Origin: Macrostomum lignano
Taxonomy: Eukaryota
Length of the DNA: 64,000 nucleotides
Direction of reading: 5' to 3'
NCBI GenBank assembly: GCA_002269645.1
Contig: NIVC01001039.1
Location: 62,001-126,000, forward strand
Shown here: positions 570-59,000 of the stretch, piece after piece
How the letters are laid out: each line of letters opens with the position of its first letter
Position numbering within the stretch: position 1 is the first letter of the stretch
Notes under the pieces: generated by a model
Seen by the model: the letters and a program-made list of their open reading frames with translations, nothing else
The model's database searches: none
What the model was told of the DNA's origin: nothing
Translations under genes and position numbers: made by a program

Positions 570-1904
570 GTCGCCGGCACCGCCACGCCTGGAGACGCCA
601 GGGCGGCCAGTCTGGACCGCTCGGCGCTACCGCCGCCGCAGCCGAAGCCAAAAACGAAGCCCAAACTGAAGCCGGGCTCCTCTAGCGCCGACGCCGACGA
701 TGCACCCAGAGTTGTCGACGCTGCCGAGGCCGGCGGCGGAGTAGTCCGGCGCCACTCGGACGAAGACGCCGATCCCGGGGCCGGCGGCGGCGGCACCGAC
801 CAGTCTGGGCGCGGCAGCGGCGGCGGCTGGGCTCACTTCTCGGACGTCGACTCGGACACTGGCCTCATCAGCGGCTCGGCCGCTGGCCGCGAGCCTTTGG
901 CCGGCTCGGCCGCTGCCGCAGCATCCACTGGCGGCCGCGGCGCCTCTCGCCGACGTCATCGTCGGGCCGCCTCGTCGTCCTCGGCAGAAGGCGGCGTCGG
1001 GGGATCCAAAAACGACGACGGCGACGATGTCGATGACGACGATTCGACGTCGGATTCGGACGACTCCGACAGCCAGGCTGGCGACGCGCCCGACGGCCGG
1101 CACAAGTACGTTGAGGGCAACGGCGGCGGCGCTGGCGGCTTCGAGGATGAAGAGGACAGCTCGGACCCGCTGGCCATGACCCGCGAGCAGCGCGAGTACT
1201 ACGCCAACCAATTCCTCACCCTGTGCCCCAGCCTCACCGGCCGCATCACCGGCCCAGTGGCCAAGCAGTTCTTTGAGAAGTCCCGCCTGCCCCCGCCCGA
1301 GCTGTCCCGCATCTGGACCCTGTCCGACCGCGACATGGACGGCCAGCTCAACCTGGCCGAGTTCTCCACCGCGATGCACCTGGTCGTGCTGAGGCGCAAC
1401 AATGTGCCGATACCCGACAGGCCGCCCCCTGTTGCTGCCGGCTACGAGCCGCTGTCCGACCAGGACGAGGCTTCGCCGCCTCCGGCGATGCCGCCGCCAC
1501 CGCCAATTCACCAGCAGCAGCCGCCGCCAGAGCCGTCAGTCTTTGGCGGAATTCCTCCAACCGGTGTTGGCGTGCTTCATCCGACCCCTAGGAAACCGAC
1601 AGCGCATCAGCAGCAGCATCTCCTGCAACAGCACGCCGACCCGTCCGCTCCGACTGTGCCGCCACGAGCTGCCAACTATCAGCTGGCGTCCTCCGCTGCT
1701 GCCGCCGCCGCTGCTGCCGACGCAGCCGCTGTTGCCTCCGGCCAGCCGCCTAATCGGGAACGCCTGCTAGCGGCGGTGAAGGCTCAGAAAGAGAAGAATC
1801 ACACCCTGGTTAGGCTCAACAATGAACTGGCTGTCGAGCTCAAGGAGGTCACCGAGCAAAGGATTGCCTTGGAATTGGAGTTGGAACGGCTGAAACCGCT
1901 TTAA
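570..1904 (+). CDS. REPS1: Terminal exon of RalBP1-associated Eps domain protein (EH domain plus C-terminal coiled coil)
   Basis: AG at 568-569; frame open from 570 to TAA at 1904. EH domain MTREQREYYANQF...SRLPPPELSRIWTLSDRDMDGQLNLAEFSTAMHLV. The tail KEKNHTLVRLNNELAVELKEVTEQRIALELELERLKPL matches the REPS RalBP1-binding coil. The 5' part of the gene lies upstream of the window. Confidence 0.88.
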   Translation, partial: VAGTATPGDARAASLDRSALPPPQPKPKTKPKLKPGSSSADADDAPRVVDAAEAGGGVVRRHSDEDADPGAGGGGTDQSGRGSGGGWAHFSDVDSDTGLISGSAAGREPLAGSAAAAASTGGRGASRRRHRRAASSSSAEGGVGGSKNDDGDDVDDDDSTSDSDDSDSQAGDAPDGRHKYVEGNGGGAGGFEDEEDSSDPLAMTREQREYYANQFLTLCPSLTGRITGPVAKQFFEKSRLPPPELSRIWTLSDRDMDGQLNLAEFSTAMHLVVLRRNNVPIPDRPPPVAAGYEPLSDQDEASPPPAMPPPPPIHQQQPPPEPSVFGGIPPTGVGVLHPTPRKPTAHQQQHLLQQHADPSAPTVPPRAANYQLASSAAAAAAAADAAAVASGQPPNRERLLAAVKAQKEKNHTLVRLNNELAVELKEVTEQRIALELELERLKPL

Positions 1905-4125: not shown

Positions 4126-5149
4126 TAAAAGTACTTTAGTATGGAGAATCTTCGTTCCATACTCCAGTCCAAATTTTAGATTGTTAACTGATTTCTGACT
4201 GGCAGGCTAACAAACTAACCATTGATTTTTTGTGCAGTTGAAATTTATTTTGTTCTGCAAACTACTGAATCACACGTTCTCAGTAGTCACTATTGCACTC
4301 GATTCAATTAATAATTAATAATCAATTGCCCGACACTCAAATCTCCCAGCTACAGTCACCGTACTCTCTCTCTTCCTTCTCTGTGTTTCATAATAATATT
4401 CCCAAGTGTAAGATTTTGGACCAGGATAAATTCAGATTCTCGATTGTACGCGGCGGTAGCGGCTTTCGCACCTTATTTATTATCCTCATCAATGCAAGCA
4501 CTCTCTCGTTAAGATTTAATTGAACTTATTACATGCTTATTATATTACAGTACTATGGTACAAATATATACATATAGAGCTCAGATAGAGACTATAATTA
4601 TAACCCTTGGAATGTTGCGCAGACCTGTGCGAAGTCTGCAAAGCTTACTTTAGGCGTTCACAAATAGCGTAACTGTTATTGCTTTGACAAACTTTTATTT
4701 ATTTTGATTCTTCGTAATAAGAAAAACTGTCTGCTCTACTTATGAGTAGCATCCATTGTATGGGATGCTTGACCTTCAAGGCTTTCTGTATCAGCGTGTG
4801 TCGCCAATGCTGCTTCTTAGTGAGTTACAATTTAGCGCAAGTGGAACTCTACATCTAGCAGAAATTGTAAAATTTCTAGCTCTTTGCAAGTATATCTTCA
4901 ACTTTAAAAGATTGACTAGCAATCTAGTGCCCCCTTCGGGGCGCGCAATATGCAAGGAGCAAAAATCATTCATGGAAAACAGTTAAAAAAGCACATTTTC
5001 TTAAGAATTCTTCAGTTTTAAAATCACCTTATTCGAGTAAAATTGTCACGGTCAAAGTCAAAGATGTTTGTTTGCTATGAATCTCTTTTTTTCAAAAAAT
5101 TAACAGACGACAAAATGAAGCTTTCACAATGATAACAGACATTCCCCCT

Positions 5150-5650
5150 AAACAGAAAACATCCCAAGACAGCAAGCATCCCCCAGCTGATAGCAAGCAT
5201 GCCGCAGATAACAAGTATCTCCCAGATAGCAAGCACCGCCCTCCAAGAGTAAGCAACCGCATATCATCCCCTGATAACAAGCATCCCCCCCCAGATAGCA
5301 AGCATTCCCTGATAGCAAGCATCCCCCAGATAGCAAGCATTCCCTGATAGCAAGCATCCCCCAGATAGCAAGCATTCCCAAGATAGCAAGCATCCCCTGG
5401 TAGCAAGCATCCCCTGATAGCAAGCATCCCCAGATAGCAAGCATTCCCCAGATAGCAAGCATCCCCCAGATAGCAAGTATCCCCCAGATAGCAAGCATCC
5501 CCCAGATAGCAAGCATCCCCAAGATAGCAAGCATCCCCCAGATAGCAAGTATCCCCCAGATAGCAAGCATCCCCCTGATAGTAAGCACCCCCTGATAGCA
5601 AGCATCCCCTGATAGCAAGCATCCCCCCAGATAGCAAGCATCCCTGGATA
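5150..5650. repeat. Minisatellite, ~20 bp (cccagatagcaagcatc core)
   Basis: Tandem copies. The ORFs called here are repeat translations. Confidence 0.92.
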
Positions 5651-6469
5651 GAAAGAATCCCATACATGTAGCTAGTACCCCTCTCTCCCAAATAGCAAGT
5701 ACACCCCCCCCCTAGAGAGCCTAAGATATCAGCATCCCCAGTGAGCTTTGGCAATCAAAGACTCCCTTGTAAGCCATGGTTTAAACTCTAACTCTCCCTT
5801 TGACCTGCCTTTGGCTTGGTGCACCAACAACTTCCAATTGATCCTTGGCATCTCAGCAACCGGCCTCCATGAGTCAGCCCAGGTGGCACGAAGTACTTTA
5901 GAAGTACTTAACTAAGTCTTATCGCAGCAAAAGTAAATTTTATTACTGTGTAGTTTTTAAATAAATATATAAATAAATATTTTAATTAAATATTTTTAAG
6001 TAAAATTAATAAAGAGATTTAAGTGACACGCGCACCTGAGAACAAGAAGAATACGAGCTATGAATGGACCTACAATTTGCCAGAGGGAGTAGTTTTGGAG
6101 TGCAAGCAAGCTTCGTAAAAGTCAAGGTACGAGTGGTACATGTACCTGATCGGTGGCTGTAGACTGTTTGGCTGTCAAATGCATAAAAATTATGGCCGTT
6201 CAACAAACTGTCCTGTCAACCTCCCGAGAATTTCGCTTTAATATGTCTCATAGTTTAATGTGAGTTCTTAGAGTAGAGGTTTGCGTTTTTTTCTTGTGAG
6301 ATTTTAATTTTGACCAATTAGGCTTACCTTAAGTCCCACAATCACTGCTAATCGCAAAGAACTTTTGGAACTCTTAATTTTAGCTTTAACTTCGAATGCA
6401 TTATGTTCTTGACTTTGTCCTGCGAATTATTATAAATATCTAATGATAGCAACACTTACTTTATTGGAT

Positions 6470-7404: not shown

Positions 7405-7827
<423 letters not shown>

Positions 7828-7935
7828 ACTTTCCAATCGTATCGCAACGTATCCCGGTGATCCTTCGATTGGTTAGCTTCGTCTCGACATCGGCATATAA
7901 CAAAAGTCCGTCCATAGCAAACTGAACGCTAAAAC

Positions 7936-7951
7936 GGCCCTTTTCAGGGCC
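7936..7951 (+). terminator. Histone mRNA 3' stem-loop (SLBP site)
   Basis: AAAAC-GGCCCT-TTTC-AGGGCC-ACCAC: perfect 6-bp stem with 4-nt loop, ~110 nt after the H3 stop. Confidence 0.95.
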
Positions 7952-8268
7952 ACCACACTAAATTGATGTTAAAATCGCCTGCTTAGTTTAGTCAACTCAA
8001 AACCCCCTGCCTAAATTTGTATAGAACAGCTGCTGAGCTGCAATTATTCTGTTTACTCAAAACAGGCAATGTGCTACATTATTGTATGTTCGTACAGAAA
8101 AATTTACGGAATGTCTGAATAAAAACTTTAGGTAGAGCTCGGGATCTTAGCTTCATGCACATTAGAGTATTTATTGTAAGTTACATTACTTACATTGAAG
8201 TTTGTTTAGGATTAAATTCTGTACTTCGTGAACCTCTTGCTAGTTGACATTTTGTACGGTAATAAAAC

Positions 8269-8284: not shown

Positions 8285-8659
8285 GTGAAGGAATTGCTAT
8301 TCACAATATACTAAATCTCTAATTAATAGCTGAATTTAGGAGGGCTGGGCCCGCTGGAGGTTAAGGAAGTTAAAGTAAACATTGTCATGTCATGGTGTAC
8401 GCTCATTTTTCAACGCTTCGAAGTCAATTTAATAAGGCTACTAAAAATTCAATCATGAAACAATGTGCTTGAGCTTGTGCAATATAGACTAAGGTAGACA
8501 ATAATTATTTTTTCACTAGTGGCGGAGCCACTCGCTTCATGCAGCACTTTTTAATATCAATTTGGTTGATTAGCCAGGTGTTAAGACGCTGGTCTTGTCC
8601 ATCGTCGAACCTTCACAACGTAGAAAACTTAGACAGCAGCCACATTCACAAGATCGAAA

Positions 8660-9874
8660 GGGGATGTCAACTTAAGCACCAGAATGAAGCCCGAAGTTCA
8701 GCTCCGGCCCAAACCGACTGCAATCGATAACTTGTCGGCCCAGACGACTAGAATCGCCGAGACATCCCATCCGGCTCCCTTCCTTGGGGTCCCAGGGGAT
8801 AAAGGGGATAAAATGGGGATCTCATGTCAACTTAAGGCTCTGGAATGGAGCCCGAAGTTCAGCTCCGGCCCAAACCGACTGCAATCGATAACTTTTCGGC
8901 CCAGACGACTAGAATCGCCGAGACATCCCATCCGGCTCCCTTCCTTGGGGTCCCAGGGGATAAAATGGGGATCTCATGTCGACTTACGGCTCTGGAATGG
9001 AGCCCGAAGTTCAGCTCCGGCCCAAACCGACTGCAATCGATAACTTGTCGGCCCAGACGACTAGAATCGCCGAGACATCCCATCCGGCTCCCTTCCTTGG
9101 GGTCCCAGGGGATAAAGGGGATAAAATGGGGATCTCATGTCAACTTAAGGCTCTGGAATGGAGCCCGAAGTTCAGCTCCGGCCCAAACCGACTGCAATCG
9201 ATAACTTTTCGGCCCAGACGACTAGAATCGCCGAGACATCCCATCCGGCTCCCTTCCTTGGGGTCCCAGGGGATAAAATGGGGATCTCATGTCGACTTAA
9301 GGCTCTGGAATGGAGCCCGAAGTTCAGCTCCGGCCCAAACCGACTGCAATCGATAACTTGTCGGCCCAGACGACTAGAATCGCCGAGACATCCCATCCGG
9401 CTCCCTTCCTTGGGGTCCCAGGGGATAAAGGGGATAAAATGGGGATCTCATGTCAACTTAAGGCTCTGGAATGGAGCCCGAAGTTCAGCTCCGGCCCAAA
9501 CCGACTGCAATCGATAACTTTTCGGCCCAGACGACTAGAATCGCCGAGACATCCCATCCGGCTCCCTTCCTTGGGGTCCCAGGGGATAAAATGGGGATCT
9601 CATGTCGACTTAAGGCTCTGGAATGGAGCCCGAAGTTTAGCTCCGGCCCAAACCGACTGCAATCGATAACTTGTCGGCCCAGACGACTAGAATCGCCGAG
9701 ACATCCCATCCGGCTCCCTTCCTTGGGGTCCCAGGGGATAAAGGGGATAAAATGGGGATCTCATGTCAACTTAAGGCTCTGGAATGGAGCCCGAAGTTCA
9801 GCTCCGGCCCAAACCGACTGCAATCGATAACTTGTCGGCCCAGACGATTAGAATCGCCGAGACATCCCATCCGG
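8660..9874. repeat. Tandem array of 8 TIR-core copies, alternating 161/152 bp (313-bp higher-order dimer)
   Basis: Equivalent positions at 8684, 8845, 8997, 9158, 9310, 9471, 9623 and 9784. A 9-bp ggggataaa indel and SNPs (cttg/cttt, tgtcaac/tgtcgac) alternate between units. Confidence 0.95.
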
Positions 9875-10174
9875 TTTCAAGTGATGAAGCTCTATTCAAT
9901 TCGAATATCGCATTAGCGTGTGTATTTTATTTCAGCTATTATATATTGTTTGCATTGTAATATTTCCGTCGTTTATTTTTCCGGATTTTAGAGAATGTTT
10001 TCGCGGTTTTGATTTGACCACTTTTGGGCGAGAGATTTTCGATACTGTGCGTCAAGTATTTGTAGCATTATTTTAAGTGATATATTAATGAAGTTAAGGT
10101 TTTGGTCAGTTTTTCTTTCTTAGTTTTATGACAGGTGCAGATTTGTTGCAGATTGCGTTTTATACTTGCTAGTA

Positions 10175-10396
10175 ATGTCCGATTTTACTTGCTCTCAATG
10201 TGGTCATCAATTCAGCAAAGCAGCCAATTTGAACCGACATCTCGAAACGACTAGATGTGGTCGCTGCTCATCTGAATCGTCTGGAGCCTTCGCGCCTCCG
10301 AGAAACGCACGAGAGGCGCTTCAGTTTCTTGCGGTCGGTGGTAAGTATGTGAAAGTTTTTTTTGAACCCAAACCTTTTTCCACGAACCGCAAATGA
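10175..10396 (+). CDS. N-terminal zinc-finger segment of the transposon protein (out of frame with the main ORF)
   Basis: ATG at 10175; CSQCGHQFSKAANLNRHLETTRC fits C-x2-C-x12-H-x5-C. Removing one T from the T8 run at 10356-10363 joins it to the transposase frame. Confidence 0.75.
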   Translation: MSDFTCSQCGHQFSKAANLNRHLETTRCGRCSSESSGAFAPPRNAREALQFLAVGGKYVKVFFEPKPFSTNRK

Positions 10397-12740
10397 GAAG
10401 GAGTTCAAACGTATTTGCGGTCTTAGCTATAGTGATTTCGATAGCTTCTCAGAAATGTTACCAGAAGTATCTCGCCTTCGTATTTTGACAAAGCCGTCTC
10501 GAATATTTTTGTACCTGAAGAAGCTTCGCCAAGGTTGCAGCTTTCAATCATTAGCTTTCGATTTCAACATTTCTGCCCAAAGAGCATGCAACATTTTTTG
10601 GGAGATTGCCAAGGAGCAGTACCTACGGGATCCATATCAACCGAGGTCGATAGCGTCGACTCCGATTCAGACTCTGCTTGAGGAAAATGTAGTACGCGAT
10701 CAATTTATTCTCGGTGTATTTCACACACTACTCAAAGGCAAGAAGCTTGTTCTTCTAGTGGGTGATCATACTTACTTTTATCTCCCTAAGAGCAGCTCAC
10801 ACCACACGCAAATTCGAACTTACTTTTCCGGCAAGAAAATGAATGTGAACAAAAAAATGGCGGTTGTCAACAGTAGAGGAAAAATTATCTACACCGCTCC
10901 CCTTACCGCCGCTATCTCGCCAACAATGGGCGATGGGAATTTGACTGCAATGCAAGTTGACATGGAGGCTGAAGGACTAATAGAGCCCACTTTGTTGCGC
11001 ATTCTGTGCTCTGTACAGAAAGATTATCACGTTATAGGCATTTTCGACAAAGGTTACAGCCACCAGCTTTGTTCACCAACTTCGGTTAACTTCCGCGACT
11101 TTATAGAGACTAATAGTAAAGGCTGCACGACGCTTCTATTTCCGACCAGTCCAGGTGACCGAGTTCTAAACGAGCAGTTTGAATTTGTAAATAATGAGGC
11201 TCCTGTTGGTGACCGATCAATACCAGGAAAGCTTACATCAATCGAAGCAAATACAAGTCGCTGCGCTACGCTTTTCCGTTATCTCGTAGAATGTAGCTTT
11301 GCTGCAATCAAGCAGGACAAATGCATAAATGAGCGACAGGAGCCGTACCAATGGCTACATGCCCCAGAGTTTACCGAACGCAGCCGGCTCGATGTTGTTA
11401 TTGAAAACTCCATGGCAAAATTCAACCGTTCGCATCCAGGATTTCAAGCTACAAGGAGTCTGCCGCCGTCATGGTCAGATTGCTCCATTTTCGAATACGG
11501 ACGGAACTTTGCTAAACGTCTTTTCATTGCGAATGAGCTAGACGAAATTGAGCAACTTGAGTACAATTGCGATTTGACTCGAATACCAACGAGTTCTACC
11601 CGAAAATGGACAGCAGTGGATCCCCTGGACCCTGAAAGTTCAGGGTTCCCCAGCGTTGACGAAAGAAATCTGGAAGAGCTTAGCATCGGCCCATACCACG
11701 TTCTTCAGTCAAAACGCTACATCGAAAACGTCAGAGTTCATGAGGTACTCAGTAGCTACGCTGGAGACTCGTGGCGCGATTTCGAATTGTTGATTTCTGA
11801 ACTGCCAAGCCATTTAAAATGCTGGAAGTTTCATCAGCGAGCGCCACCAAAGGGGTGGAGCAGTAAGTTTGGAGAATGGAGGCCATCTTGGATATATTTA
11901 GCCGTTCTTCATTCCCGTCATCGGTCAAAAACTTACCGAGTTGTCCTTCGTATTTGCGAAACTGCAAGCGGTAACCGATTCGGATTTCGTGACTCGGGGC
12001 TGCTGCGTCTGCATGGCTACTTTTCATCCTCAAAGGCCGGAAGCAGGACAGCAGGGTGTGACAGTCATGTTATGGCTGTGGTTAGAATGCTAGGCTGTTA
12101 TGCATATCACCCCGAAAGCTACAACATGTGCAGCAGCAGCTTCCGATTTATTGACAGTGCTTTGCCAAAAGCACTGATTGCCAATCTTTACAATGATCAA
12201 TCTGGTGGTCATCCAGCTCCAAATGCACCTCGCAGAGACAGTGCTGAATCGCAGCAAGATGAACAGAGGCACAGTTCAAATGCTACTGGTTCATTGAATT
12301 CGCCGAAGAAGTTATTTGGGTTGCCAAATAATGGCCTGCAGTGCTACGCAAATGCAGCAGTGCAATTGTTTCTCTGCCTGCATTCTAATGGATGCATTTT
12401 AAAAGAGACTAGCAACGACCAAGTCCATCGAGAGCTGCTTCGTCTTCTGACGGAGATGCAACAGCGGTCTGCAACAGTCACTCCACTGTTAACGGCAGTT
12501 CGGTTGCAACATCCAGATTCATTTCAAACAAATCAGCGCCATTGCGTCAACGAATTTGTTCAAACGCTTCTAATACATCTGGAATTTCTGTCATCAGATG
12601 CTTTCACAGAATTTTCACTCATTCAAACTTGTCGAGATTGCCAGCGCACAAGTGCTGAAGTTCCTGTTGGCACAATCGATAACAGAGTGATTTGCATTCC
12701 TCTCTGTCAATTTGAGCGCTCAATGCAATTGTCAGTTTAG
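10362..12740 (+). CDS. Transposase (HTH + DDE_Tnp_4-like core + degenerate SWIM-like region) fused to the Cys-box half of a USP/UCH peptidase C19
   Basis: HTH: RIFLYLKKLRQGCSFQSLAFDFNISAQRACNIF. Catalytic candidates: D in GDHT (10764), D in FDKG (11046), E in RYLVE (11289). USP Cys box GLPNNGLQCYANAAVQL (Cys 12342), QRHCVNEF motif and CRDC. Confidence 0.88.
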   Translation: MNPNLFPRTANEKEFKRICGLSYSDFDSFSEMLPEVSRLRILTKPSRIFLYLKKLRQGCSFQSLAFDFNISAQRACNIFWEIAKEQYLRDPYQPRSIASTPIQTLLEENVVRDQFILGVFHTLLKGKKLVLLVGDHTYFYLPKSSSHHTQIRTYFSGKKMNVNKKMAVVNSRGKIIYTAPLTAAISPTMGDGNLTAMQVDMEAEGLIEPTLLRILCSVQKDYHVIGIFDKGYSHQLCSPTSVNFRDFIETNSKGCTTLLFPTSPGDRVLNEQFEFVNNEAPVGDRSIPGKLTSIEANTSRCATLFRYLVECSFAAIKQDKCINERQEPYQWLHAPEFTERSRLDVVIENSMAKFNRSHPGFQATRSLPPSWSDCSIFEYGRNFAKRLFIANELDEIEQLEYNCDLTRIPTSSTRKWTAVDPLDPESSGFPSVDERNLEELSIGPYHVLQSKRYIENVRVHEVLSSYAGDSWRDFELLISELPSHLKCWKFHQRAPPKGWSSKFGEWRPSWIYLAVLHSRHRSKTYRVVLRICETASGNRFGFRDSGLLRLHGYFSSSKAGSRTAGCDSHVMAVVRMLGCYAYHPESYNMCSSSFRFIDSALPKALIANLYNDQSGGHPAPNAPRRDSAESQQDEQRHSSNATGSLNSPKKLFGLPNNGLQCYANAAVQLFLCLHSNGCILKETSNDQVHRELLRLLTEMQQRSATVTPLLTAVRLQHPDSFQTNQRHCVNEFVQTLLIHLEFLSSDAFTEFSLIQTCRDCQRTSAEVPVGTIDNRVICIPLCQFERSMQLSV

Positions 12741-13117
12741 ACAAAATCTTCTGCGCTTTTGTCGCTCCTCAAGTAGTGAAATGTTCGGACGCCAATTGCC
12801 TGGGCGATTGTAATCAAGAGATCGTAGTAACACCTGGAAAGTTTACCCTGATTTATCTTGATCGTGCTAGTATGGATGGCCACCTAAAGCTTCAAACTCC
12901 TGTAAGCTTTTCTGCAAGGTCAGCGGGTGTTTCTACACTTGGTAAGCCAGTGGCCACAATATCACACCATGGAAACCGACTGAAATCGGGACATTTCACA
13001 GCAAGCGTACTGAGCTGTGTGTGGACGAGAATTGACGACATGAAAGTTACGTCAGACTATAACCCGTTCGTACGTGAGCCTGAGTGCATCGTGCTCGTTG
13101 CACTTTTAAACTCGTAA
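12716..13117 (+). CDS. His-box half of the USP domain (-1 frame relative to the main ORF)
   Basis: Frame open from 12716: ALNAIVSLDKIFCAFVAPQVVKCSDANC...TLIYLDR...ATISHHGNRLKSGHFTAS...WTRIDDMKV (His 12992, Asp-Asp 13034-13039). Confidence 0.85.
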   Translation, partial: ALNAIVSLDKIFCAFVAPQVVKCSDANCLGDCNQEIVVTPGKFTLIYLDRASMDGHLKLQTPVSFSARSAGVSTLGKPVATISHHGNRLKSGHFTASVLSCVWTRIDDMKVTSDYNPFVREPECIVLVALLNS

Positions 13118-13464
13118 AAGCATTTTTAGCGAAAATACAATTGTTTTAAGCGAGTGTACTGTACGTTTTGTATTGCAGATTTTAAAGGACATGCAGATTA
13201 AGAAACAATGTCATCTCACGCATTCTTTACGTACCATAGGTTACATGTGAAGATAATTCAGACTGACATCAAATAACAAAAGCTTTGCATTAGTTCTTTC
13301 AATTTCTTTTAGACTCACAATTAGCTAAAAACTGGAAGTATTTTTTACTGAATCAAAGAACTTAAACCCAAAAACCGTTTCTTAGGACTGAGAAACTTTT
13401 GCAATTATGATTTTACTAAGCTATGCGTGAGAGGCGTTACTTTATTTGCTTAAAAACGTGTGCT

Positions 13465-13610
13465 GCTTTGCATGACATGCTTTGTTTTTATTACTTTGAT
13501 AACTTGTACAGCTTTGCATGACATGCTTTGTTTTTATTACTTTGATAACTTGTACAGCTTTGCATGATATGCTTTGTATCTATTACGTCATAACTTGTAC
13601 AGCCTTGCGT
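13465..13610. repeat. Short tandem duplication (~44 bp) in the 3' region of the transposon
   Basis: ctttgcatgacatgctttgtttttattactttgataacttgtacag in about 2.5 copies. Confidence 0.8.
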
Positions 13611-14239
13611 GATATTCTTTATTTTACCAATATACATGGTTTCGGTTTATCGTCAAAAGTTCTGCTTACTAATAACCAAATGAATTTACCAGTTAATTTT
13701 TTCAAACTGAGTTTCCAGATCGGCATTTTTAACACTGTTTCGATACGAACAAATCATTTTTATTACTTAACAATCAATATATAATAGCTGAAATAAAATA
13801 CATCCGCTAATGCGATATTCGAATTGAATAGAGCTTCGTCACTTGAAACCGGATGGGATGTCTCGGCGATTCTAGTCGTCTGGGCCGACAAGTTATCGAT
13901 TTCAGTCGGTTTGGGCCGGAGCTGAACTTCGGGCTCCATTCTGGTGCTTAAGTTGACATCCCCTTTCGCAACGCAGAAAACTACACTGCATGGTTCTTGT
14001 TACATCCTATAATCTACATTAAACCTATAAAATGATTGATTTATGATTGTAAAATTAGATAGCTGCTCGAATTCTGAGCTGGTACCTTTGTTGCTGCAAA
14101 TGATCGAACTCCGCTGGAAACTTTCCCGGCTGGCAAAGTTCGTAGACCAAATTCATATAGCGTTTTTAGTAGGGCAAATGCTTGTCATTGGTTCTGTGCT
14201 GCTTTTACCTGCCTATTTGTGGATGTACTAGCTTTCCAC

Positions 14240-15720
14240 CAGTGGGTTGATACGGGACTGATACCTGTCCATCAGTGGGTATGCTAACTGTCCATCAGTG
14301 GGTGTGATACCTGTCCATCAGTGGGTATGCTAACTGTCCATCAGTGGGTGTGATACCTGTCCATCAGTGGGTATGCTAACTGTCCATCAGTGGGTGTGAT
14401 ACCTGTCCATCAGTGGGTATGCTAACTGTTCATCAGTGGGTATGCTAACTGTCCATCAGTGGGTATGCTAACTGTCCATCAGTGGGTATGCTAACTGTCC
14501 ATCAGTGGGTATGCTAACTGTCCATCAGTGGGTATGCTAACTGTTCATCAGTGGGTATGCTAACTGTTCATCAGTGGGTATGCTAACTGTTCATCAGTGG
14601 GTATGCTAACTGTTCATCAGTGGGTATGCTACCTGTTCATCAGTGGGTATGCTGACTGTTCATCAGTGGGTATGCTAACTGTCCATCAGTGGGTATGCTG
14701 ACTGTTCATCAGTGGGTATGCTAACTGTCCATCAGTGGGTATGCTAACTGTTCATCAGTGGGTATGCTACCTGTTCATCAGTGGGTATGCTACCTGTTCA
14801 TCAGTGGGTATGCTACCTGTTCATCAGTGGGTATGCTACCTGTCCATCAGTGGGTATGCTAACTGTCCATCAGTGGGTATGCTAACTGTTCATCAGTGGG
14901 TATGCTACCTGTTCATCAGTGGGTATGCTACCTGTTCATCAGTGGGTATGCTACCTGTTCATCAGTGGGTATGCTACCTATCCATCAGTGGGTATGCTAC
15001 CTGTCCATCAGTGGGTGTGATACCTGTCCATCAGTGGGTATGCTACCTGTTCATCAGTGGGTATGCTACCTGTCCATCAGTGGGTGTGGTACCTGCCCAT
15101 CAGGTGTGCTACGTACCTGCCCATCAGGTGTGCTACGTACCTGCCCATCAGGTGTGCTACGTACCTGCCCATCAGGTGTGCTACGTTACGTACCTGCCCA
15201 CCAGTGGGTGTGATATCTGTTTATTAGTGGGTGTGATACCTGTCCATCAGTGGGTGTGACACCTGTCTATCAGCATGTGTGCTACCTATCTATCAGTATG
15301 TGCTACCTGTCCATCAGACTGTGTGCTACCTGTCTATCAGCGTGTGCTACCTGTCTATCAGCATGTGCTACCTGTCTATCAGCATGTGCCACCTGTCTAT
15401 CAGCATGTGCCACCTGTCTATCAGTATGTGCTACCTGTCTATCAGTATGTGCTACCTGTCTATCAGTATGTGCTACGTGTCTGTCAGTATGTGCTACCTG
15501 TTCTATCAGTATGTGCTACCTGTCCAATGTCCATCAGTGGGTGTGATACCTGTCCATCAGTATGTGCTACCTGTCCATCAGTATGTGTGTTACCTGTCCT
15601 TCAGTGGGTGTGATACCTGTCCATCAGTATGTGTGTTACCTGTCCATCAGTGGGTGTGATACCTGTCTATTAGTATGTGCTACCTGTCTATCAGTATGTG
15701 CTGCTACCTGTCCAGTAGCA
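14240..15720. repeat. Minisatellite, 23 bp (catcagtgggtatgctaactgtc), drifting into 21-bp variants
   Basis: Long tandem array with gradual change of unit. Confidence 0.95.
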
Positions 15721-53039: not shown

Positions 53040-56000
53040 CCAATAGCAACAGCAACAGTCGCGGCCTCCAGTGTCGCAGCAGCAGCAGGCGATGCCTTTC
53101 GGGCTGCACAGTACCGCCACCACTGCCGCCGTCAGTGCCGCACTGTGCATGCAGTTCGCACAGTTGCTATGCACAGACTCCCGGCAGGCTACGGCTTCAG
53201 CATCAGCGGCCAGCGTCCGTGCGTTGTTAGCGCAGTTGTGCCTGGCAGCGCCGCGCAGCACGCCGGCCTGAAACCTGGCGATTACCTGCTGGGCGTCAAT
53301 GGCCAGCCAGTTGATGGGGCTGAGCACGAGCGAGTGGCTGCATTGATTGGCGCCAGCGGCGACTCTCTGGCGCTTCAGGTTGTGTCAGTGAGTTGGTCAA
53401 CTTTTGTAGGGAACGTAGAGGTTTTGATAATTCAGAGGGTCTAGGGAATTTAGCTTTAGCTGTTGGAATTTTGATGGTGTGAGCAATTTAAAGGGTGTAG
53501 GTAATTTAAAGCGTGTGGGGAATTCAAAGCGTGTGGGTGATTTAAAGGGTGTGGGGAATTTAAAGCGTGTGGAGAATTAAAGCGTGTGGGGAGTTTAAAT
53601 AGGTATAGGGATGGGGAATTTAAGGATGTGGGGGAATTTAAAGCGTGTGGGGAGTTTAAAGGGGTAAAGGGGTGGGGAATTTAAAGGATGTGGGGAATTT
53701 ATTGGGTGTGGGGAATTTGTAGGGTGTGGGGAATTTATAGGGTGTAGGGAAATTAAAGGCTGTGACTTAAAAAAAAATCAATGGCGGAACGGATTTTAGG
53801 GGCTGGGGGGAAGCTTCTAAGACGTAGGAAGCTTTTGGGCATTTGGGACTTTTTGAGAAAGTTGATGGCATTGCAATATTTCGAGCTCAGTCTGAGGTTC
53901 AAAACAAGGCTCAGTCTGAGGTTCGAAGCCCACTGTTACTTTGGACTTGGCGGCCCTCATCAATATGACAACAGAATTCGTGAGCACTACTCAGAGCGAG
54001 AACTCATTCTTAATCTGTGATGCCGAGCAGGCCGAGCCCAGCCTCCTAGGCGCCTGCTCAGACAATGATGAAGCGGAAATGCCGCATCAAAAGCTGGCAC
54101 AGCAACAGGCGCCGCCTCCGCCACCACCGCGGCATCAGCACTGCGGCGCCATCGGGCCGGAGCAGCGCTACGAAGACGCCGCCGCTGCCACTGCCCGGCT
54201 CTGTCGGGCGAGCTGGCGGGCCGCTGGCTGGTCATCCACGTCGCCAGCCTGCAGCTGCCGGTCCCGGCGCCCGCTGACCGGCTGCGCGTCGTTCGCTCGG
54301 CGATCGCCAGCGCCCGCGCCGCGGCCCGCCTGCAGCCGTCGTCGCCCTCGGCCTCGCCGTCCTCACTATCGCCGTCGTCTTCGACCTCGTCGACGAAGCC
54401 GACGCCGACTCCAGCAACTTCCGCGGCGGGCCAGCCGACCCTTCTGGAGGTGACGCCGCGCTCTGTCAGCCTCGCCGACGCCCGAGGCCGCTCGCTGCTC
54501 AGCCTGCCAGCAGACAGTCTGGCCTTCGTCTGCGCCTACAACGAGGACGCCCGCTACTTTGCTCTCCTCACCGTCGCTGGCGCGGTGCACATCTTCCGGG
54601 TCAGCGGCCGCCTAGCCGATCATCGGCGCCGCGGTCACGCTCGATGGACGGCGGCGTTCGGATTGAACTGCCAGCCGGACGAGTCCGCTGGCTGCTGCAC
54701 CCAGCTGCCTCAGGTGGCGGCTCCCATCGTGCACCGGCTGGTGCGCCTGTTCGCCGACAAGGAGGCCGCGGCGCCGCCCAGTCTGAGCTATCCGACCCCG
54801 CCGCCGTCTGGCCCGCCGGCTCTCAATCGACAGCAGCGCCAGCTTCGTCGACCGTCGGTTCCGATACACGTCGCCGACTCTTCATCGGGCACCCTGACTG
54901 GCCTGGCGGCATCGTTGAACTCAACAGTCAGGACGCTGGCCTCTGGAGAAGTTGTTCAAGGGCAGCAGCAAAAGACGGATGTCGCTCCGTCGACGCGATG
55001 GACAACTGGACTCAGTGCGCTCTCTTGTGAGGTACAGATTTACGCTCGTACCTGTTATTATATTGGTGACTGGGATTCCCCTAACTGGATTCCTCTAGCT
55101 GGGATTCTCCTAGCTATAATTCCCTAATTGGATTCCCCGAACTGGGATTTTCCTAGCAGGGATTTCCCTAACTGGATTCCCCTAGCTGGGATTCTCCTAG
55201 CTGATATTCTCCTAGCTGGGATTCCCCTAGCTGGATTCCTCTAGCTGGATTCCCCTAGCTGGGATTCTCCTAACTGGAATTCCCCTAACTGAATTCCTCT
55301 AGCTGGGATTCCCCTAGCTGGGATTCCCCTAGCTGGAATTCCCCTAGCTGGGATTCTCCTAACAGGATTCTCCTAACAGGATTCTCCTATCTGGGATTCC
55401 CCTAATTGGATTCCACTGTCAGGAATTTTCCTAACTGTGATTTCACTGACTGGGATTCTATTTAACTGGAGCTCCACTGACTTGAACTCCACTGAAGAAA
55501 CCAAATCTTAGCTGACAGAATGATATGAGGTAGTGTTATTATTGTAAAGCGGAGAAAACTGCCGCTTTTTTTGCGCATCAGGCAGCAAGTGTCCAATGCC
55601 GAAGAGCTAGTTTCCCTCATAGCTGACCTTTTAACTAATATGTCTCACTTAAAAAGCAATTACAAATTAACGCTAGGTAACTAATTAAGTAAAGCCAGCG
55701 GCCTCGCCTCTCCATACCGCAGAATCTGGCCAGCAGCGCCTCCTCCGATGACGCCGAATCGCCGCCAATCGTTGCCGACAATCAGCGCCGACGCAGCGGC
55801 GGCGACTTCGGCGTCGGTACGGGAATCGGCGCCAAATTCGTCCCGGCGCCGCCGCCGCTGCTGCGCCGCCGGCCCCAATCGGCGATGGCGTTCGGCTCCG
55901 GCGTCGTTGATGCGCCCGACGCCATCGACGATACAGCCGCCACTGGCGGTCCCTCCGACTGGTCGGCCGGGCTGGACCGCCTGCTGGCCGACCCGACTGG

Positions 56001-59000
56001 CGTCAAGCTGTTCGCCGAATTTCTGCGCGGCGAGTTCAGCGAAGAGAATGTCGCCTTCTGGCTGGCTGTTGAGCGGTATAGGGCGATTGAGGACCAGGAG
56101 GCAGTGAGTTCGGGGCTGGGGATGAGTAGTGGGATCGGGACTTCGCTAGTTGGGATCGGAACTTTGGTAGTTGGAATCAGGACTTTGATAGTTGGGATCA
56201 GGACTTTAGTAGTTGGGATCAGGACTTTGATAGTTGGGATCGGGACTTTGCTAGTTGGGATCGGGACTTCGATAGCTAGGATCGGGACTTTGGTAGTTGG
56301 GATCAGGACTTTAGTAGTTGGGATCAGGACTTTGATAGTTGGGATCAGGACTTTGATAGTTGGGGTCGGGACTTCGATAGTTGGGATCGGGACTTCCGTT
56401 AGTTGGGATTTGGACTTCCGTTAGTTGGGATCGAGACGTCGATAGTTGGGATCGAGACGTCGATAGTTGGGATCGAGACGTCGATAGTTGGGATCGGGAC
56501 GTCGATAGTTGGAATCGGGACGTCGATAGTTGGGATCGGGACGTCGATAGTTGGGATCGGGACGTCGATAGTTGGGATCGGGACGTCGATAGTAGGGATC
56601 GGGACGTCGATAGTAGGGATCGGGACTTTGGTATTTGGATCAAGACTTCCGTTAGTTGGGATCGGAACTTCCGTTAATTGGGATCGGGACTTCCATTAGT
56701 TTGGATGGGGACTTCGATAGTTGGGATTTAGACTCAAATAGTTGGGATCGGGAGTCAGAGAGTTAGGACCGGTGACTTATGAGTTCGGATTTTATGATCA
56801 GGGCTTAATAAATTGGGATCGGGAAACTCCGGCATGGAAACCCAGCAGTCACTGGAAAATAGTGTCGGATGCGCTGCTCCCATCCGCAGCTGTCAACCGA
56901 AGCCGCCCGCATAGTATACGACTTCATCGGCATCAACGCGCCGCAGTGCGTCAATCTGGACGGCGCCACGGTTGAGCAGCTTCGCGCCGATATTCTGGAC
57001 GCCAGTCGGCCGCCGCCAAGTCGACACGCGTTCGACAAGGCGCAGCGGCACATCTACGATCTGATGCGGATGGACAGCTACGCCAGGTTCCTCAAGTCCA
57101 GCTGCTACCGGGAGGCTGTGGCCGCGGCCGCAGCACAGCGACAACAGCGACCGTTGACTATCGGGGCCGAGACTCTCGACAACGGCGGCGGGGCCAAGCG
57201 GCGCGGCTTCTTGGCGAGCTTGGTTCGCGGTGAGCTGGCCTTGCCACGGTCCTTACTCTCAGAGTCCCGATCCCTACTCCCAGTCCTGATCCCTACTCTC
57301 AGAGTCCTGATCCCTACTCTCAGAGTCCTGATCCCTACTCTCAGTCCCGATCCCTACTCCCAGTCCTGATCCCTACTCTCAGTCCTGATCCCTACTCTCA
57401 GTCCTGATCCCTACTCTCAGTCCCGATCCCTACTTTCAGATTCCCAATCCCTGCTCTCGGAATCTTGATCCCTACTTCTTAGTTTTTAATCCCAAATTTG
57501 AGTCCTAATTTTATTTAAATTCCAATCGCTTCTTAGCGCTTATTTCGGAAGGCCCCTTTTACTAGGAATTAAAAATTGTGTAAATTTTTGGCTACTAAAA
57601 CTTATTAAACAATTGTTTATACAGGCCGCACGCTGAGACGCCACTCCGATCAGCAGCAGCAGCACGGATCTCGGTCACCGTCACCTCCGTCTGCATCAGC
57701 GCTGCCCACCGCTGCGGGCTGCTGCCGCGTTCAGCTGGCTGACGGCTCCTCGGCTCTGCTGGACGTTCGCGGCGCAGCCGGCCAGCAGCAGCGCAGCCTG
57801 CGCGAGGCCCTGCTAGATCTCTGCGAACGGCGCGGCCTCAACTTTGCCGCCGCTGAAGTCCGCGTGCTCAACGACGACGAGCCCGACGGTGTCAGCGGCA
57901 GCGGCGGTCTGGACGCTCCACTGTCGGCGTTCGCTGGCCGGCAAATCCGGATGGAACGGCGAGTTCTGTTCCGGCTAGAGCTGCCAGCCCCAGCCGGCCG
58001 GTGCGTCGGTGTCCGAGCTCGGCCAGCCAAATCGCTGCGTGACGTGCTGCGCCCGGTGTGCGGTCGGTACGGCCTCCGCCTGGACCGGCTCGTGGTCTGC
58101 CGCGAGTCCGGCTTCGTGCCGCTGGGCCTGGACGCTCCGGTTGACTGCGTTGACGGCCTCCGCCTGTGCGCCCTGCCCAAGGAGGACTTTGTCGGTGAGT
58201 TGTGCGGCGTCTGTGGAGCAGGCAGACAAGAATGTTGCTCCCTGTTTCCGGGGGCGCAGTGAGATCATGCTCTTTCCCTTATTAGATGGGGTCGTTCCTA
58301 ACCAAAGAGAAGTCTCCGATTTCGCTTTAAAATATTTCGCGTATGCAAAAAGCCGCCTATTATGATTTATTAACCGTTATAGTTACGTAACTTTAACCGC
58401 TGTGCTAAGCTAATCAATTAACCTAATTAATTAATCGTTAATCCTGTCACTATTTCGTTAACGCTTCGACCCAGCGGATTTATTTGGCCGTATTTGCTTG
58501 CAGATTTTCACCTCTTTGGCGACAACAGGGTGCCGCCGCGCCGACGGCAAAACCACCAGCAGAAGTCGGCCGCCAGTGCGGTCAAAAGATCTAGCATTGG
58601 CCATGCGGTGCACAGGCTGCTTAAAAGCTCCTTTGCCTAGGCCTGTCTCTTTCATGTGCCCATAGTCGTCTCTCATTGGCTGACAACCGGTGCTTGCACC
58701 CACCTCACTTCGTAGTCATCTCTCATTGGCTGATACCCGTGCTTGCACCCACCTCACTTCGTAGTCGTCTCTCATTGGCTGATACCTCGTGCTTGCACCC
58801 ACCTCACTTCGTAGTCGTCTCTCATTGGCTGATGCCTCGTGCTTGCACTTAGTGCTGTAATATTTAATGTTTTCTTCTTTTTTGTTTGTCCGCGATTTAA
58901 TAGCAGTATTTTTAGCAAAAAAGTGGTTACAAAAATTCAAGTCGACGCATTTTGTCTTAACTTTTCTTTTTACTAATAATGCATTTTTGTAACATCCTGT

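What the first reader, a model, noticed from the sequence alone, without database searches (positions are those of the whole stretch)
10175..13117. DNA transposon whose DDE transposase is fused to a complete USP-type deubiquitinase
Seen: inside one pair of TIRs, a reading frame of ~980 codons (after two 1-nt corrections) runs Zn finger - HTH - DDE core (D10764, D11046, E11289) - SWIM-like region - linker - USP domain. The transposase-to-Cys-box join is in a single uninterrupted ORF. The USP part has the oxyanion Asn and Cys (GLPNNGLQCYAN, Cys 12342), a QxxxxEF motif, two Cys pairs (CRDC, CSDANC), the His box (HHGNRLKSGHFT, His 12992) and WTRIDD. Established: peptidase C19 uses this Cys/His/Asp triad. 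Some transposons carry Ulp1 (C48) or OTU proteases, and ISL2EU elements typically pair the transposase with a YqaJ exonuclease. Inference: I am not aware of a described PHIS-group transposase with a C-terminal USP domain. It could deubiquitinate the transposase itself (escaping degradation) or chromatin and repair factors at insertion sites.
Basis: partly seen in the sequence, partly recalled or inferred. Interest (0 to 1): 0.92.

Follow-up and report, generated by a model that had tools for sequence, protein, structure and literature searches.

The report
Transposase fused to a deubiquitinase
A 5.3-kb cut-and-paste DNA transposon in an animal (probably Macrostomum flatworm) genome encodes a single protein joining a Harbinger/ISL2EU-type transposase to a complete ubiquitin-specific protease; this arrangement recurs across a whole clade of such transposons, and I found no description of it.

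Summary
After two 1-nt corrections, one 979-codon frame (10175-13117) reads C2HC zinc finger, HTH, DDE core, Cys/His module, linker and USP domain. All five catalytic coordinates check out. The C-terminus passes Pfam UCH (39.9 bits, cut-off 23.9) and folds as a USP (pLDDT 86; Foldseek USP18/USP2, probability 1.0).

The element is larger than reported, 8655-13968. Its roughly 208-bp terminal inverted repeats (TIRs) are expanded on the left into a 7.7-copy tandem array.

The fusion is not a one-off capture. The closest relative (46% identical, 976 aa composite) is collinear. Four distant lineages (955-1639 aa, mostly Tara Oceans contigs) carry transposase plus USP in intact ORFs with the Cys/His/Asp triad kept. 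In one family, USP dN/dS is 0.39-0.47 in the two deeper comparisons. Other lineages of the clade lack the USP, so it is accessory.

The transposase belongs to the PHIS superfamily but fails the tests for ISL2EU and canonical Harbinger. The Spy tests are mixed: the AAA|TTT flanks fit, but the DDE spacing does not.

The "SWIM-like" label got no tool support. No description was found in the PHIS surveys or the searched literature; Repbase and Dfam could not be checked. The DUB function is inferred.

The parts
8655..13968 (+). Whole transposon by the widest boundary, 5,314 bp. If the TIR starts at GGGG the element is 8660-13963, flanked by CGAAA and TTTCG.
   Evidence: The outermost 120 bp (8655-8774) match 13968-13849 in reverse complement at 98.3%. 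Flanks were read directly. No other copy lies in the window.
8664..9874 (+). Left-end tandem array: 7.7 copies of a 161-bp unit (313-bp higher-order repeat). Each unit contains the outer ~112 bp of the TIR.
   Evidence: TRF score 2352, 98% matches at period 313; self-BLAST. The same units occur in translated form in Macrostomum lignano gene models.
9763..9962 (+). Innermost left TIR arm: the last array unit plus ~88 bp of unique inner TIR.
   Evidence: Inverted repeat 9782-9962 / 13761-13941, 181 nt, 94%; BLAST 9763-9952 vs 13959-13771, 94.7%.
10175..10360 (+). ORF segment 1 (aa 1-62), containing the C2HC zinc finger (Cys6, Cys9, His22, Cys28; nt 10190-10258).
   Evidence: Translation; weak zf-C2H2 hit; the four ligands are invariant in the alignment with the P0001 composite and the finger recurs in P0003-P0007.
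10356..10363 (+). Frameshift 1: a T8 homopolymer that is one base off.
   Evidence: Frames read. P0001 is continuous through the homologous FLNPNLFP motif.
10362..12734 (+). ORF segment 2 (aa 63-853): HTH, DDE core, Cys/His module, linker and the N-terminal half of the USP, in one uninterrupted frame.
   Evidence: 792-aa ORF. It gave 126 homologues at E<=1e-3 in the exhaustive search.
10485..10601 (+). Helix-turn-helix (aa 104-142).
   Evidence: HTH_Tnp_4 at 23.8 bits against a cut-off of 27. The same domain was found in 27 of 57 more distant homologues.
10764..11291 (+). DDE catalytic core: D197 (10764), D291 (11046), E372 (11289), with the R-x3-E motif. Spacing is D(93)D(80)E.
   Evidence: Codons verified. 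D135, E310 and R306 of the ORF are invariant and D229 is nearly invariant in 14 relatives. Relatives P0006 and P0007 pass DDE_Tnp_4, as do 41 of 57 distant hits.
11823..12116 (+). It is degenerate here (SSSKAGSRTAGCDSHV).
   Evidence: Alignment A6. No SWIM support from Pfam or PDB profiles.
12117..12317 (+). Poorly conserved, polar linker between the transposase and the USP.
   Evidence: Low conservation in the pairwise alignment, columns ~650-715. AF2 pLDDT is below 50 for the first 11 residues of the USP construct.
12318..13114 (+). USP (peptidase C19) domain, aa 715-979. It holds the Cys box with Cys723 (12342), the QxxxxEF motif, zinc-ribbon Cys pairs CRDC and CSDANC, the His box with His939 (12992) and Asp953 (13034).
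   Evidence: Pfam UCH 39.9 bits. Family profile vs PDB: USP2 at 2.4e-19. AF2 pLDDT 86.4, pTM 0.86. Foldseek: USP18, USP2, USP4, USP15, TM ~0.7, probability 1.0.
12735..12736 (+). Frameshift 2, inside the USP domain between ...SMQLS and LDKIF...
   Evidence: Three-frame translation. Homology continues across it with P0014 and P0079.
12737..13117 (+). ORF segment 3 (aa 854-979 plus stop): the C-terminal half of the USP.
13761..13968 (-). Right TIR: a single unit plus the inner arm.

Best explanation
This is an autonomous-type, single-ORF cut-and-paste DNA transposon of the PHIS superfamily (PIF/Harbinger-ISL2EU-Spy; Pfam DDE_Tnp_4 and HTH_Tnp_4 lineage). It belongs to a distinct clade.

Shown:
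- TIRs of about 208 bp bound a 5.3-kb element. Its only gene encodes a C2HC zinc finger, an HTH, a DDE core, a Cys/His module, a roughly 65-aa flexible linker and a compact (~265 aa) USP deubiquitinase with an intact Cys/His/Asp triad.
- This copy carries two single-base frameshifts, so it is either a very recently inactivated copy or an intact one with assembly errors.
- The USP is a long-standing part of the transposase in this clade and is under purifying selection. It has been lost in some lineages, so it is accessory to the transposition chemistry.

Inferred:
- The zinc finger and HTH bind the TIRs, and the DDE core excises and reintegrates the element.
- The tethered USP removes ubiquitin in the immediate neighbourhood of the transpososome.
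- My preferred reading (about 45%) is that it counteracts host ubiquitin-dependent turnover or restriction of the transposase complex, as proposed for the OTU and VTD DUBs of Helitrons.
- Next (about 25%) is deubiquitination of chromatin or repair factors (H2A/H2B-Ub, PCNA-Ub) at excision or insertion sites.

The host is probably Macrostomum lignano or a close relative.
For: Anatomy.

USP identity: Pfam UCH above its cut-off; profile vs PDB gives USP2 at 2.4e-19 and 105 USP chains; AF2 pLDDT 86.4; Foldseek hits are all USPs with probability 1.0.

PHIS identity: the DDE triad and R-x3-E are invariant in 14 relatives; DDE_Tnp_4 is above cut-off in P0006 and P0007 and in 41 of 57 distant homologues, with HTH_Tnp_4 in 27 of 57.

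Recurrence of the fusion:
- The P0001 plus P0014 composite is 976 aa, collinear and 46% identical.
- P0009 (1048 aa, 20 cluster members), P0024 (955 aa), P0044 (1119 aa, 19 contigs in Tara Oceans and other ENA assemblies) and P0066 (1639 aa) have transposase plus UCH in single intact ORFs.
- The catalytic Cys, His and Asp/Asn are kept in all of them.

Selection: in the P0009 family, dN/dS is 0.15-0.16 for the transposase and 0.47, 0.39 and 0.73 for the USP. It is below 1 with Fisher p = 0.027 and 0.0028 for the two deeper pairs.

Co-inheritance: the clade is monophyletic (100% bootstrap) with USP-bearing lineages on both sides of its basal split. The USP tree recovers the same pairs, (P0024, P0066) and (window, P0014).

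Mobility: M. lignano gene models P0010 and P0016 contain the same TIR units (95-97% aa identity) joined to transposase remnants that share identical internal deletions. These are non-autonomous derivatives present at two or more loci.
Against: - Only one full copy could be examined, and it has two frameshifts.
- No DUB or transposition activity has been measured.
- The window protein itself does not reach any Pfam DDE model, and its HTH hit is just below the cut-off.
- The distant USP-bearing relatives come from metagenome contigs without recognisable TIRs, so their transposon status is inferred from homology and copy number.
- The P0003/4/5/6/11 lineages, and possibly P0022/P0027, lack the USP, so it is dispensable.
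- USP dN/dS is two to four times higher than that of the transposase, and one pair (0.73) is not significantly below 1.
- The trees are simple neighbour-joining trees with 70-75% support at key inner nodes, so 'ancestral with losses' versus 'several gains' is not settled.
Confidence: 0.78

Rival explanations
1. One-off capture or assembly chimera: a fragment of a host USP gene landed behind the transposase in this copy only.
For: Only one copy lies in the window. A frameshift sits inside the USP.
Against: The transposase-to-Cys-box join is one open frame. The 46%-identical relative family has the same join in frame (L002). Four distant lineages have the fusion in intact ORFs. The transposase and USP trees agree where resolved.
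Confidence: 0.03
2. A domesticated host gene (a transposase-derived USP protein) rather than a mobile element.
For: Long intact ORFs under purifying selection in the metagenomic relatives. No TIRs were found on those contigs.
Against: In the window the gene sits between 95-98% identical TIRs and is frameshifted. Deletion derivatives with the same TIR occur at other loci in M. lignano models. The P0009 and P0044 families occur as many near-identical variants or contigs of similar length, as repeats do.
Confidence: 0.05
3. The USP fold serves mainly as a ubiquitin-binding or targeting module, steering the transposase to ubiquitinated chromatin (for example H2A/H2B-Ub or stalled-fork PCNA-Ub). 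Catalysis would be secondary or absent.
For: Constraint on the USP is relaxed relative to the transposase. The compact fold has divergent loops (~20% identity to cellular USPs).
Against: The Cys, His and Asp/Asn of the triad and the oxyanion Asn are retained in every lineage at 16-35% overall identity. Pseudo-DUBs usually lose them.
Confidence: 0.1
4. A self-processing protease: the USP cleaves the polyprotein to release a free transposase.
For: The window linker contains ...QSGG|H..., which superficially resembles a Gly-Gly cleavage site.
Against: The GG is not conserved in the closest relative. There is no ubiquitin-like domain upstream of it (Pfam), and USPs need the ubiquitin fold for substrate recognition (established knowledge).
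Confidence: 0.04

Closest known systems
Spy transposons (PHIS superfamily; filed under ISL2EU in Repbase)
   Same: A single long ORF with an N-terminal DNA-binding region plus a DDE core. Long variable TIRs starting with GG. If the TIR starts at GGGG (8660), the element sits exactly between AAA and TTT with no duplication, which is the Spy hallmark (PMC4122938). Found in invertebrates.
   Different: Spy transposases are about 580-700 aa with no zinc finger and no protease. The DDE spacing here is D93D80E against D(79-80)D(44-62)E. The terminal motif GGANNNNG is not clearly met. Only one insertion was examined, so the target site is unproven. No phylogeny against reference Spy sequences was possible.
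ISL2EU transposons
   Same: The HTH_Tnp_4 / DDE_Tnp_4 lineage, TIRs beginning with GG, animal hosts.
   Different: ISL2EU elements have a THAP finger, a second ORF with a YqaJ exonuclease, AT duplications at AATT targets and 330-576 aa transposases. None of these features is present here.
PIF/Harbinger (including the Pangu and Nuwa groups)
   Same: The same DDE superfamily and the same R-x3-E motif.
   Different: There is no Myb/SANT second ORF and no 3-bp TWA, ANT, CWG or TNA duplication. This clade is separated from canonical DDE_Tnp_4 proteins with 100% bootstrap.
Helitron/Helentron elements carrying OTU, VTD or UCH domains
   Same: Transposon-encoded deubiquitinase domains with conserved catalytic residues. 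Activity has been demonstrated for VTD, and the proposed role is protecting transposition proteins from degradation (PMC9741609). UCH is listed among domains captured by Helitron-like elements (PMC11417382).
   Different: Those are rolling-circle elements with RepHel proteins, not DDE cut-and-paste elements. There the UCH is reported as a captured domain, not as a clade-wide fusion to the transposase.
Ulp1 (peptidase C48)-bearing DNA transposons (MULE/KI-MULE, CACTA, Ginger; also P0109 here)
   Same: A ubiquitin-like-modifier protease attached to a DDE transposon. P0109 is an HTH_Tnp_4 plus DDE_Tnp_4 protein with a C-terminal Peptidase_C48 domain in a neighbouring PHIS clade, which is a direct parallel.
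   Different: A different protease clan and fold (C48 versus C19) and presumably a different modifier (SUMO versus ubiquitin).
Cellular USPs (USP2, USP18, USP12/46, USP4/15, USP21)
   Same: The fold, Cys and His boxes, zinc-ribbon cysteines and catalytic triad.
   Different: Only 14-20% identity. This is a minimal ~265-aa core without the usual insertions or accessory domains, and it is fused to a transposase.

Membership tests
Peptidase C19 / USP deubiquitinases | Pfam UCH (PF00443) score above the curated cut-off | tested here: met
   39.9 bits against 23.9, aa 715-959. Relatives score 38.6-55 bits.
Peptidase C19 / USP deubiquitinases | Cys box with oxyanion Asn and catalytic Cys; His box with catalytic His; downstream Asp/Asn | tested here: met
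   GLPNNGLQCYAN (Cys723), HHGNRLKSGHF (His939), WTRIDD (Asp953). These align with the same residues in seven family members and with USP2 and USP12.
Peptidase C19 / USP deubiquitinases | USP fold (palm, thumb, fingers) | tested here: met
   AF2 pLDDT 86.4, pTM 0.86 with a 6-sequence alignment. The top 50 Foldseek PDB hits are all USPs, E down to 5e-17, TM 0.65-0.75. The single-sequence model was uninformative (pLDDT 34).
Peptidase C19 / USP deubiquitinases | Isopeptidase activity on ubiquitin or a ubiquitin-like modifier | not testable with these tools
   Needs Ub-AMC or Ub-PA assays.
PHIS superfamily DDE transposons | DDE triad in the D...K...D...D...P...R-x3-E pattern; homology to DDE_Tnp_4 and HTH_Tnp_4 | tested here: met
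   The triad and R-x3-E are invariant. The exhaustive search links the ORF to proteins of which 41 of 57 pass DDE_Tnp_4 and 27 of 57 HTH_Tnp_4. The window protein itself has no DDE_Tnp_4 hit and HTH at 23.8 bits against 27. About 30-40 extra residues lie between D2 and E.
PHIS superfamily DDE transposons | Terminal inverted repeats flanking the transposase gene | tested here: met
   8655-8774 vs 13968-13849 at 98.3%; inner arms at 94-95%.
ISL2EU | THAP domain in the transposase | tested here: not met
   No THAP hit. The finger is C2HC, C-x2-C-x12-H-x6-C.
ISL2EU | Second ORF with a YqaJ exonuclease | tested here: not met
   No other ORF of 90 aa or more lies between the TIRs and outside the tandem array.
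ISL2EU | AT target-site duplication at an A|AT|T target | tested here: not met
   Flanks are ...GATCGAAA / TTTCGCAAC... No AT duplication appears at any plausible boundary.
Spy | Insertion between AAA and TTT without duplication | tested here: inconclusive
   Compatible if the terminus is GGGG at 8660 (CGAAA|...|TTTCG). However, the same bases could belong to the TIR or form a 2-bp CG duplication. There is one copy only and no empty site.
Spy | Single transposase ORF; DDE spacing D(79-80)D(44-62)E; terminal GGANNNNG | tested here: not met
   Single ORF: yes. Spacing is D93D80E. The terminus GGGGATGT does not match GGANNNNG cleanly.
Spy / ISL2EU / Harbinger | Phylogenetic placement with reference (Repbase) transposases | not testable with these tools
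   No reference sequences were available. Supplements held none.
PIF/Harbinger | 3-bp TWA duplication and a Myb/SANT second ORF | tested here: not met
   No SWIM hit for 10 family members even at E<=10. PDB profile hits are only marginal, to NSD Cys-rich regions at E=0.017. In the window copy, three of the Cys positions that are conserved in relatives are Ser or Asp.

The most novel reading that the evidence does not exclude
A previously undescribed, ancient clade of PHIS cut-and-paste transposons exists in flatworms and in marine eukaryotes sampled by Tara Oceans. Its ancestral transposase carried an active USP deubiquitinase. These would be the first DDE transposase-USP fusions, with DUB activity required for efficient transposition by countering host ubiquitin-dependent control of transposases. 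The clade may also share Spy-like duplication-free integration at AAA|TTT.
Probability: 0.4. Interest if true: 0.75.

Novelty: new variant of a known kind. Interest (0 to 1): 0.64.

Why it matters
Unrelated transposon classes have each acquired a different ubiquitin or ubiquitin-like protease: OTU and VTD in Helitrons, Ulp1 in MULE, CACTA and Ginger elements, and now USP in a PHIS clade, with a Ulp1 fusion in a neighbouring one. That convergence suggests hosts use ubiquitin or SUMO conjugation to restrain DNA transposons. Little is known about such a layer of control.

A single-ORF cut-and-paste element with a covalently tethered, separable DUB is a much simpler test system than a Helitron. 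Wild-type, catalytic-Cys mutant and USP-deleted transposases can be compared directly in excision and integration assays.

Macrostomum lignano is a transgenic regeneration model, so the biology could be followed in vivo. If active, the clade would also add a new transposase scaffold to the Spy and PHIS gene-transfer toolbox.

Tried and rejected
- Intron instead of frameshift at 10341-10397: rejected. No donor/acceptor pair restores the frame, and P0001 is continuous there.
- Single-sequence AF2 of the USP: uninformative, pLDDT 34. Repeated with an alignment.
- Word-indexed protein search: found only P0001, and later P0016. The exhaustive search was needed.
- JGI metagenome scans: nothing found with the protein alignment or with a 30-nt TIR core.
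- TIRs or termini on metagenomic contigs of the P0044, P0009, P0024 and P0066 families: none found, so no target-site evidence comes from relatives.
- SWIM assignment: no support.
- Reference Spy or ISL2EU protein sequences from paper supplements: none held.
- Zisupton/KDZ as an alternative superfamily (recalled as SWIM- or protease-associated): dropped, because the DDE core is clearly of the DDE_Tnp_4 type.
- dN/dS between the window and its nearest relative: not attempted, because synonymous sites are saturated at 46% aa identity. The P0009 family was used instead.


Full report
**What is in the sequence**

The window is eukaryotic and animal-like. It carries an intronless histone H3 gene (7417-7827) followed by the histone 3' stem-loop (7931-7975, Rfam 34 bits), plus EH-domain and RGS-domain exons.

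Between 10175 and 13117 on the + strand there are three abutting reading-frame pieces. They run 10175-10360, 10362-12740 (a 792-codon ORF) and 12737-13117. One correction inside a T8 homopolymer (10356-10363) and one at 12735-12736 join them into 979 codons with no internal stop.

The first junction is not an intron. The closest homologue, P0001, reads ...VRQFLNPNLFP... in a single ORF across it.

**The element is larger than the finding's coordinates**

The reading frame lies between inverted repeats (9782-9962 / 13761-13941, 181 nt, 94%). The true termini are further out. The 120 bp at 8655-8774 match 13968-13849 at 98.3%.

Between 8664 and 9874, the outer ~112 bp of the terminal inverted repeat (TIR) is amplified into 7.7 tandem units. 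These are 161-bp units arranged in a 313-bp higher-order repeat with 98% matches. The right end has a single unit.

The sequence reads ...AAGAT CGAAA GGGGATGTCAAC ... GTTGACATCCCC TTTCG CAACGC.... The boundary is therefore ambiguous, with three readings:
- The TIR starts at CGAAA, with no duplication.
- It starts at AAAGGGG, with a 2-bp CG duplication.
- It starts at GGGG, with the element sitting precisely between AAA and TTT.

The third reading is the signature of Spy elements, whose TIRs also start with GG (PMC4122938; PMC4482050). One copy cannot decide between these. No second copy lies in the window.

**The C-terminal domain is a USP**

- Pfam UCH scores 39.9 bits against a cut-off of 23.9 over aa 715-959.
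- A profile of the homologous domains from six transposases hits 105 solved USP chains. The best are USP2 at 2.4e-19, then USP12, USP15, USP21, USP4, USP18 and others.
- AlphaFold2 with that six-sequence alignment gives pLDDT 86.4 and pTM 0.86. A single-sequence run had failed.
- The top 50 Foldseek matches in the PDB are all USP catalytic domains, with probability 1.0 and TM 0.65-0.75.
- The oxyanion Asn and Cys723, the QxxxxEF motif, His939 and Asp953 align with the catalytic residues of USPs.

**The N-terminal part is a PHIS-type transposase, but not a canonical one**

The window protein gives only a near-threshold HTH_Tnp_4 hit (23.8 bits against 27) and no DDE model hit.

The exhaustive HMMER search of 1.84 billion representatives returned 126 homologues. 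Close relatives P0006 and P0007 pass DDE_Tnp_4. Of 57 more distant hits, 41 pass DDE_Tnp_4 and 27 pass HTH_Tnp_4.

In a 14-sequence alignment, the DDE triad and the R-x3-E motif that unite IS5, Harbinger, ISL2EU and Spy are invariant or nearly so (motif from PMC4122938). The D2-E interval is 30-40 residues longer than usual, which explains the missed Pfam hit.

The N-terminal finger is C2HC and is conserved in relatives. It is not THAP.

In relatives it reads C..S..C..G.R..GCC.HV, and it is partly degenerate here. It matches neither Pfam SWIM nor solved SWIM domains.

Against published definitions, the element fails the ISL2EU tests: no THAP, no YqaJ ORF, no AT duplication. It also fails the Harbinger tests: no Myb ORF, no TWA duplication. 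It resembles Spy in having a single ORF and possibly in its target site, but not in DDE spacing or protein length.

A neighbour-joining tree puts the window protein in a 13-member clade. That clade separates from canonical DDE_Tnp_4 proteins with 100% bootstrap.

**The fusion is a family trait**

The nearest family comes from JGI metagenome 3300040801. Contig L001 covers aa 6-677 at 51% identity and stops in the linker. Contig L002 is a slightly deleted copy of the same family, 90-95% identical in DNA. It runs in frame from that linker into a complete USP (P0014, UCH 55 bits). The 976-aa composite is collinear with the 979-aa window protein at 46% identity. That breaks down to about 51% in the transposase and 35% in the USP, with an unconserved linker.

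Four much more distant lineages (23-27% identity for the three in the alignment) also have transposase plus UCH in single intact ORFs:
- P0009: 1048 aa, 20 cluster members falling into three subfamilies.
- P0024: 955 aa.
- P0044: 1119 aa, on 19 contigs, several of them from Tara Oceans assemblies.
- P0066: 1639 aa, with N-terminal C2H2 fingers.

These are documented. P0079 is a further USP-only fragment. All of them retain the catalytic Cys, His and Asp/Asn where those positions are covered.

In contrast, the P0003, P0004, P0005, P0006 and P0011 proteins end shortly after the Cys/His module. For P0003, P0005 and P0027, six-frame HMM searches of 690-840 bp downstream found no USP.

In the tree, USP-bearing lineages lie on both sides of the basal split. 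The USP-only tree recovers the same pairings, (P0024, P0066) at 99% and (window, P0014, P0079) at 76%. The simplest reading is an old acquisition with later losses. The inner nodes have only 70-75% support, so repeated gain is not excluded.

**Selection**

Three subfamilies of the P0009 family (3-7% aa divergence, all ORFs intact) were compared by Nei-Gojobori dN/dS. The transposase gives 0.15-0.16. The USP gives 0.47, 0.39 and 0.73. For the two deeper pairs the USP value is significantly below 1 (Fisher p = 0.027 and 0.0028).

The USP is therefore maintained by selection, but less tightly than the transposase. This fits an accessory role, or a role involved in host-element conflict.

**Host and mobility**

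The profile search returned a UniRef protein of Macrostomum lignano (P0016).

P0016 and the chimeric model P0010 contain translated TIR or array units that are 95-97% identical to the window's, over 31-86 aa. In both, these units are joined to transposase remnants that share the same internal deletions. P0016 also contains the opposite-strand TIR further on.

Two conclusions follow:
- The window very probably comes from M. lignano or a close congener (taxonomy).
- The family has TIR-bounded non-autonomous derivatives at other loci, as expected of a mobile element.

**How it most likely works**

Shown: the anatomy, the homologies, the conserved catalytic residues and the selective constraint.

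Inferred from established knowledge of DDE transposases: the finger and HTH recognise the TIRs, and the DDE core excises and reinserts the element.

Inferred for the USP: it is tethered by a flexible linker and acts next to the transpososome. I favour protection of the transposase complex from ubiquitin-dependent degradation or restriction (about 45%). Three observations point that way:
- Unrelated transposons have recruited different DUB folds: OTU and VTD in Helitrons, with VTD activity demonstrated (PMC9741609), and UCH listed in Helitron-like elements (PMC11417382).
- A sister PHIS clade carries a C-terminal Ulp1 (P0109).
- The domain is dispensable in some lineages.

Action on ubiquitinated chromatin or repair factors is the main alternative (about 25%). 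Ubiquitin-binding-only and self-processing roles are less likely, because the triad is conserved and no conserved ubiquitin-like or Gly-Gly site precedes the domain.

**Novelty**

The PHIS survey of 836 genomes (380 families) and its tables list no protease or ubiquitin-related domain. The Spy papers describe 580-700 aa transposases made up only of DNA-binding and DDE domains. Full-text searches for the combination found nothing. Repbase, Dfam and InterPro architectures could not be queried.

I therefore rate it a new variant of a known kind: a PHIS transposon clade with a USP-fused transposase. It is moderately to highly interesting, but not categorically new, because transposon-encoded deubiquitinases are already known in other classes.

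Noticed in passing
window 8664-9874 (and 13849-13968): The outer ~112 bp of the TIR is amplified at the left end only, into a 7.7-copy tandem array (161-bp units, 313-bp higher-order repeat, 98% identity). At least 1.5 such units are also present in an M. lignano gene model (P0010). TIR-derived satellite formation therefore seems to be a feature of the family.
   Followed up: partly
P0010 (UPI0007A1D47C) and P0016 (UniRef A0A1I8IYQ6, Macrostomum lignano): Annotated flatworm 'genes' (one named a DUF3480 protein, the other a 2393-aa model with THAP and PRP4 domains) contain translated TIR units plus internally deleted remnants of this transposase. They are probably gene models contaminated by non-autonomous copies of the element.
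   Followed up: partly
P0109 (930 aa, from the representative search): An HTH_Tnp_4 plus DDE_Tnp_4 transposase with a C-terminal Peptidase_C48 (Ulp1) domain, in the clade next to the USP-bearing one (two such proteins among 57 hits). This is a parallel fusion of a ubiquitin-like-modifier protease to a PHIS transposase.
   Followed up: partly
window 7417-7975: An intronless histone H3 gene (136 aa) with a canonical histone 3' stem-loop lies about 700 bp upstream of the transposon's left end.
   Followed up: no
window 14262-15714: A 23-bp minisatellite (about 63 copies, 88% matches, with 21-, 24- and 42-bp variants) begins about 300 bp beyond the right TIR.
   Followed up: no
window 5092-5754: Overlapping long ORFs on the minus strand encode Cys/Leu/Gly-rich periodic peptides. 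This is a tandem-repeat artefact rather than a gene.
   Followed up: no
window 897-1904; 55885-56424 and 56869-57369: GC-rich (about 58-61%) stretches carry an EH-domain ORF and two RGS-domain exons. These are ordinary host genes interspersed with AT-rich (29-35% GC) repeat-like stretches at 20-26 kb and 48-52 kb.
   Followed up: no
L003-L006 (P0044 family), L007 (P0009 family): In the distant USP-bearing families, a 454-580 aa ORF with C2H2 fingers lies immediately upstream of, or overlaps, the transposase-USP ORF. It probably belongs to the same protein, as in the single 1639-aa ORF of P0066. The full proteins there would be about 1,600 aa, against the compact 979 aa here.
   Followed up: partly
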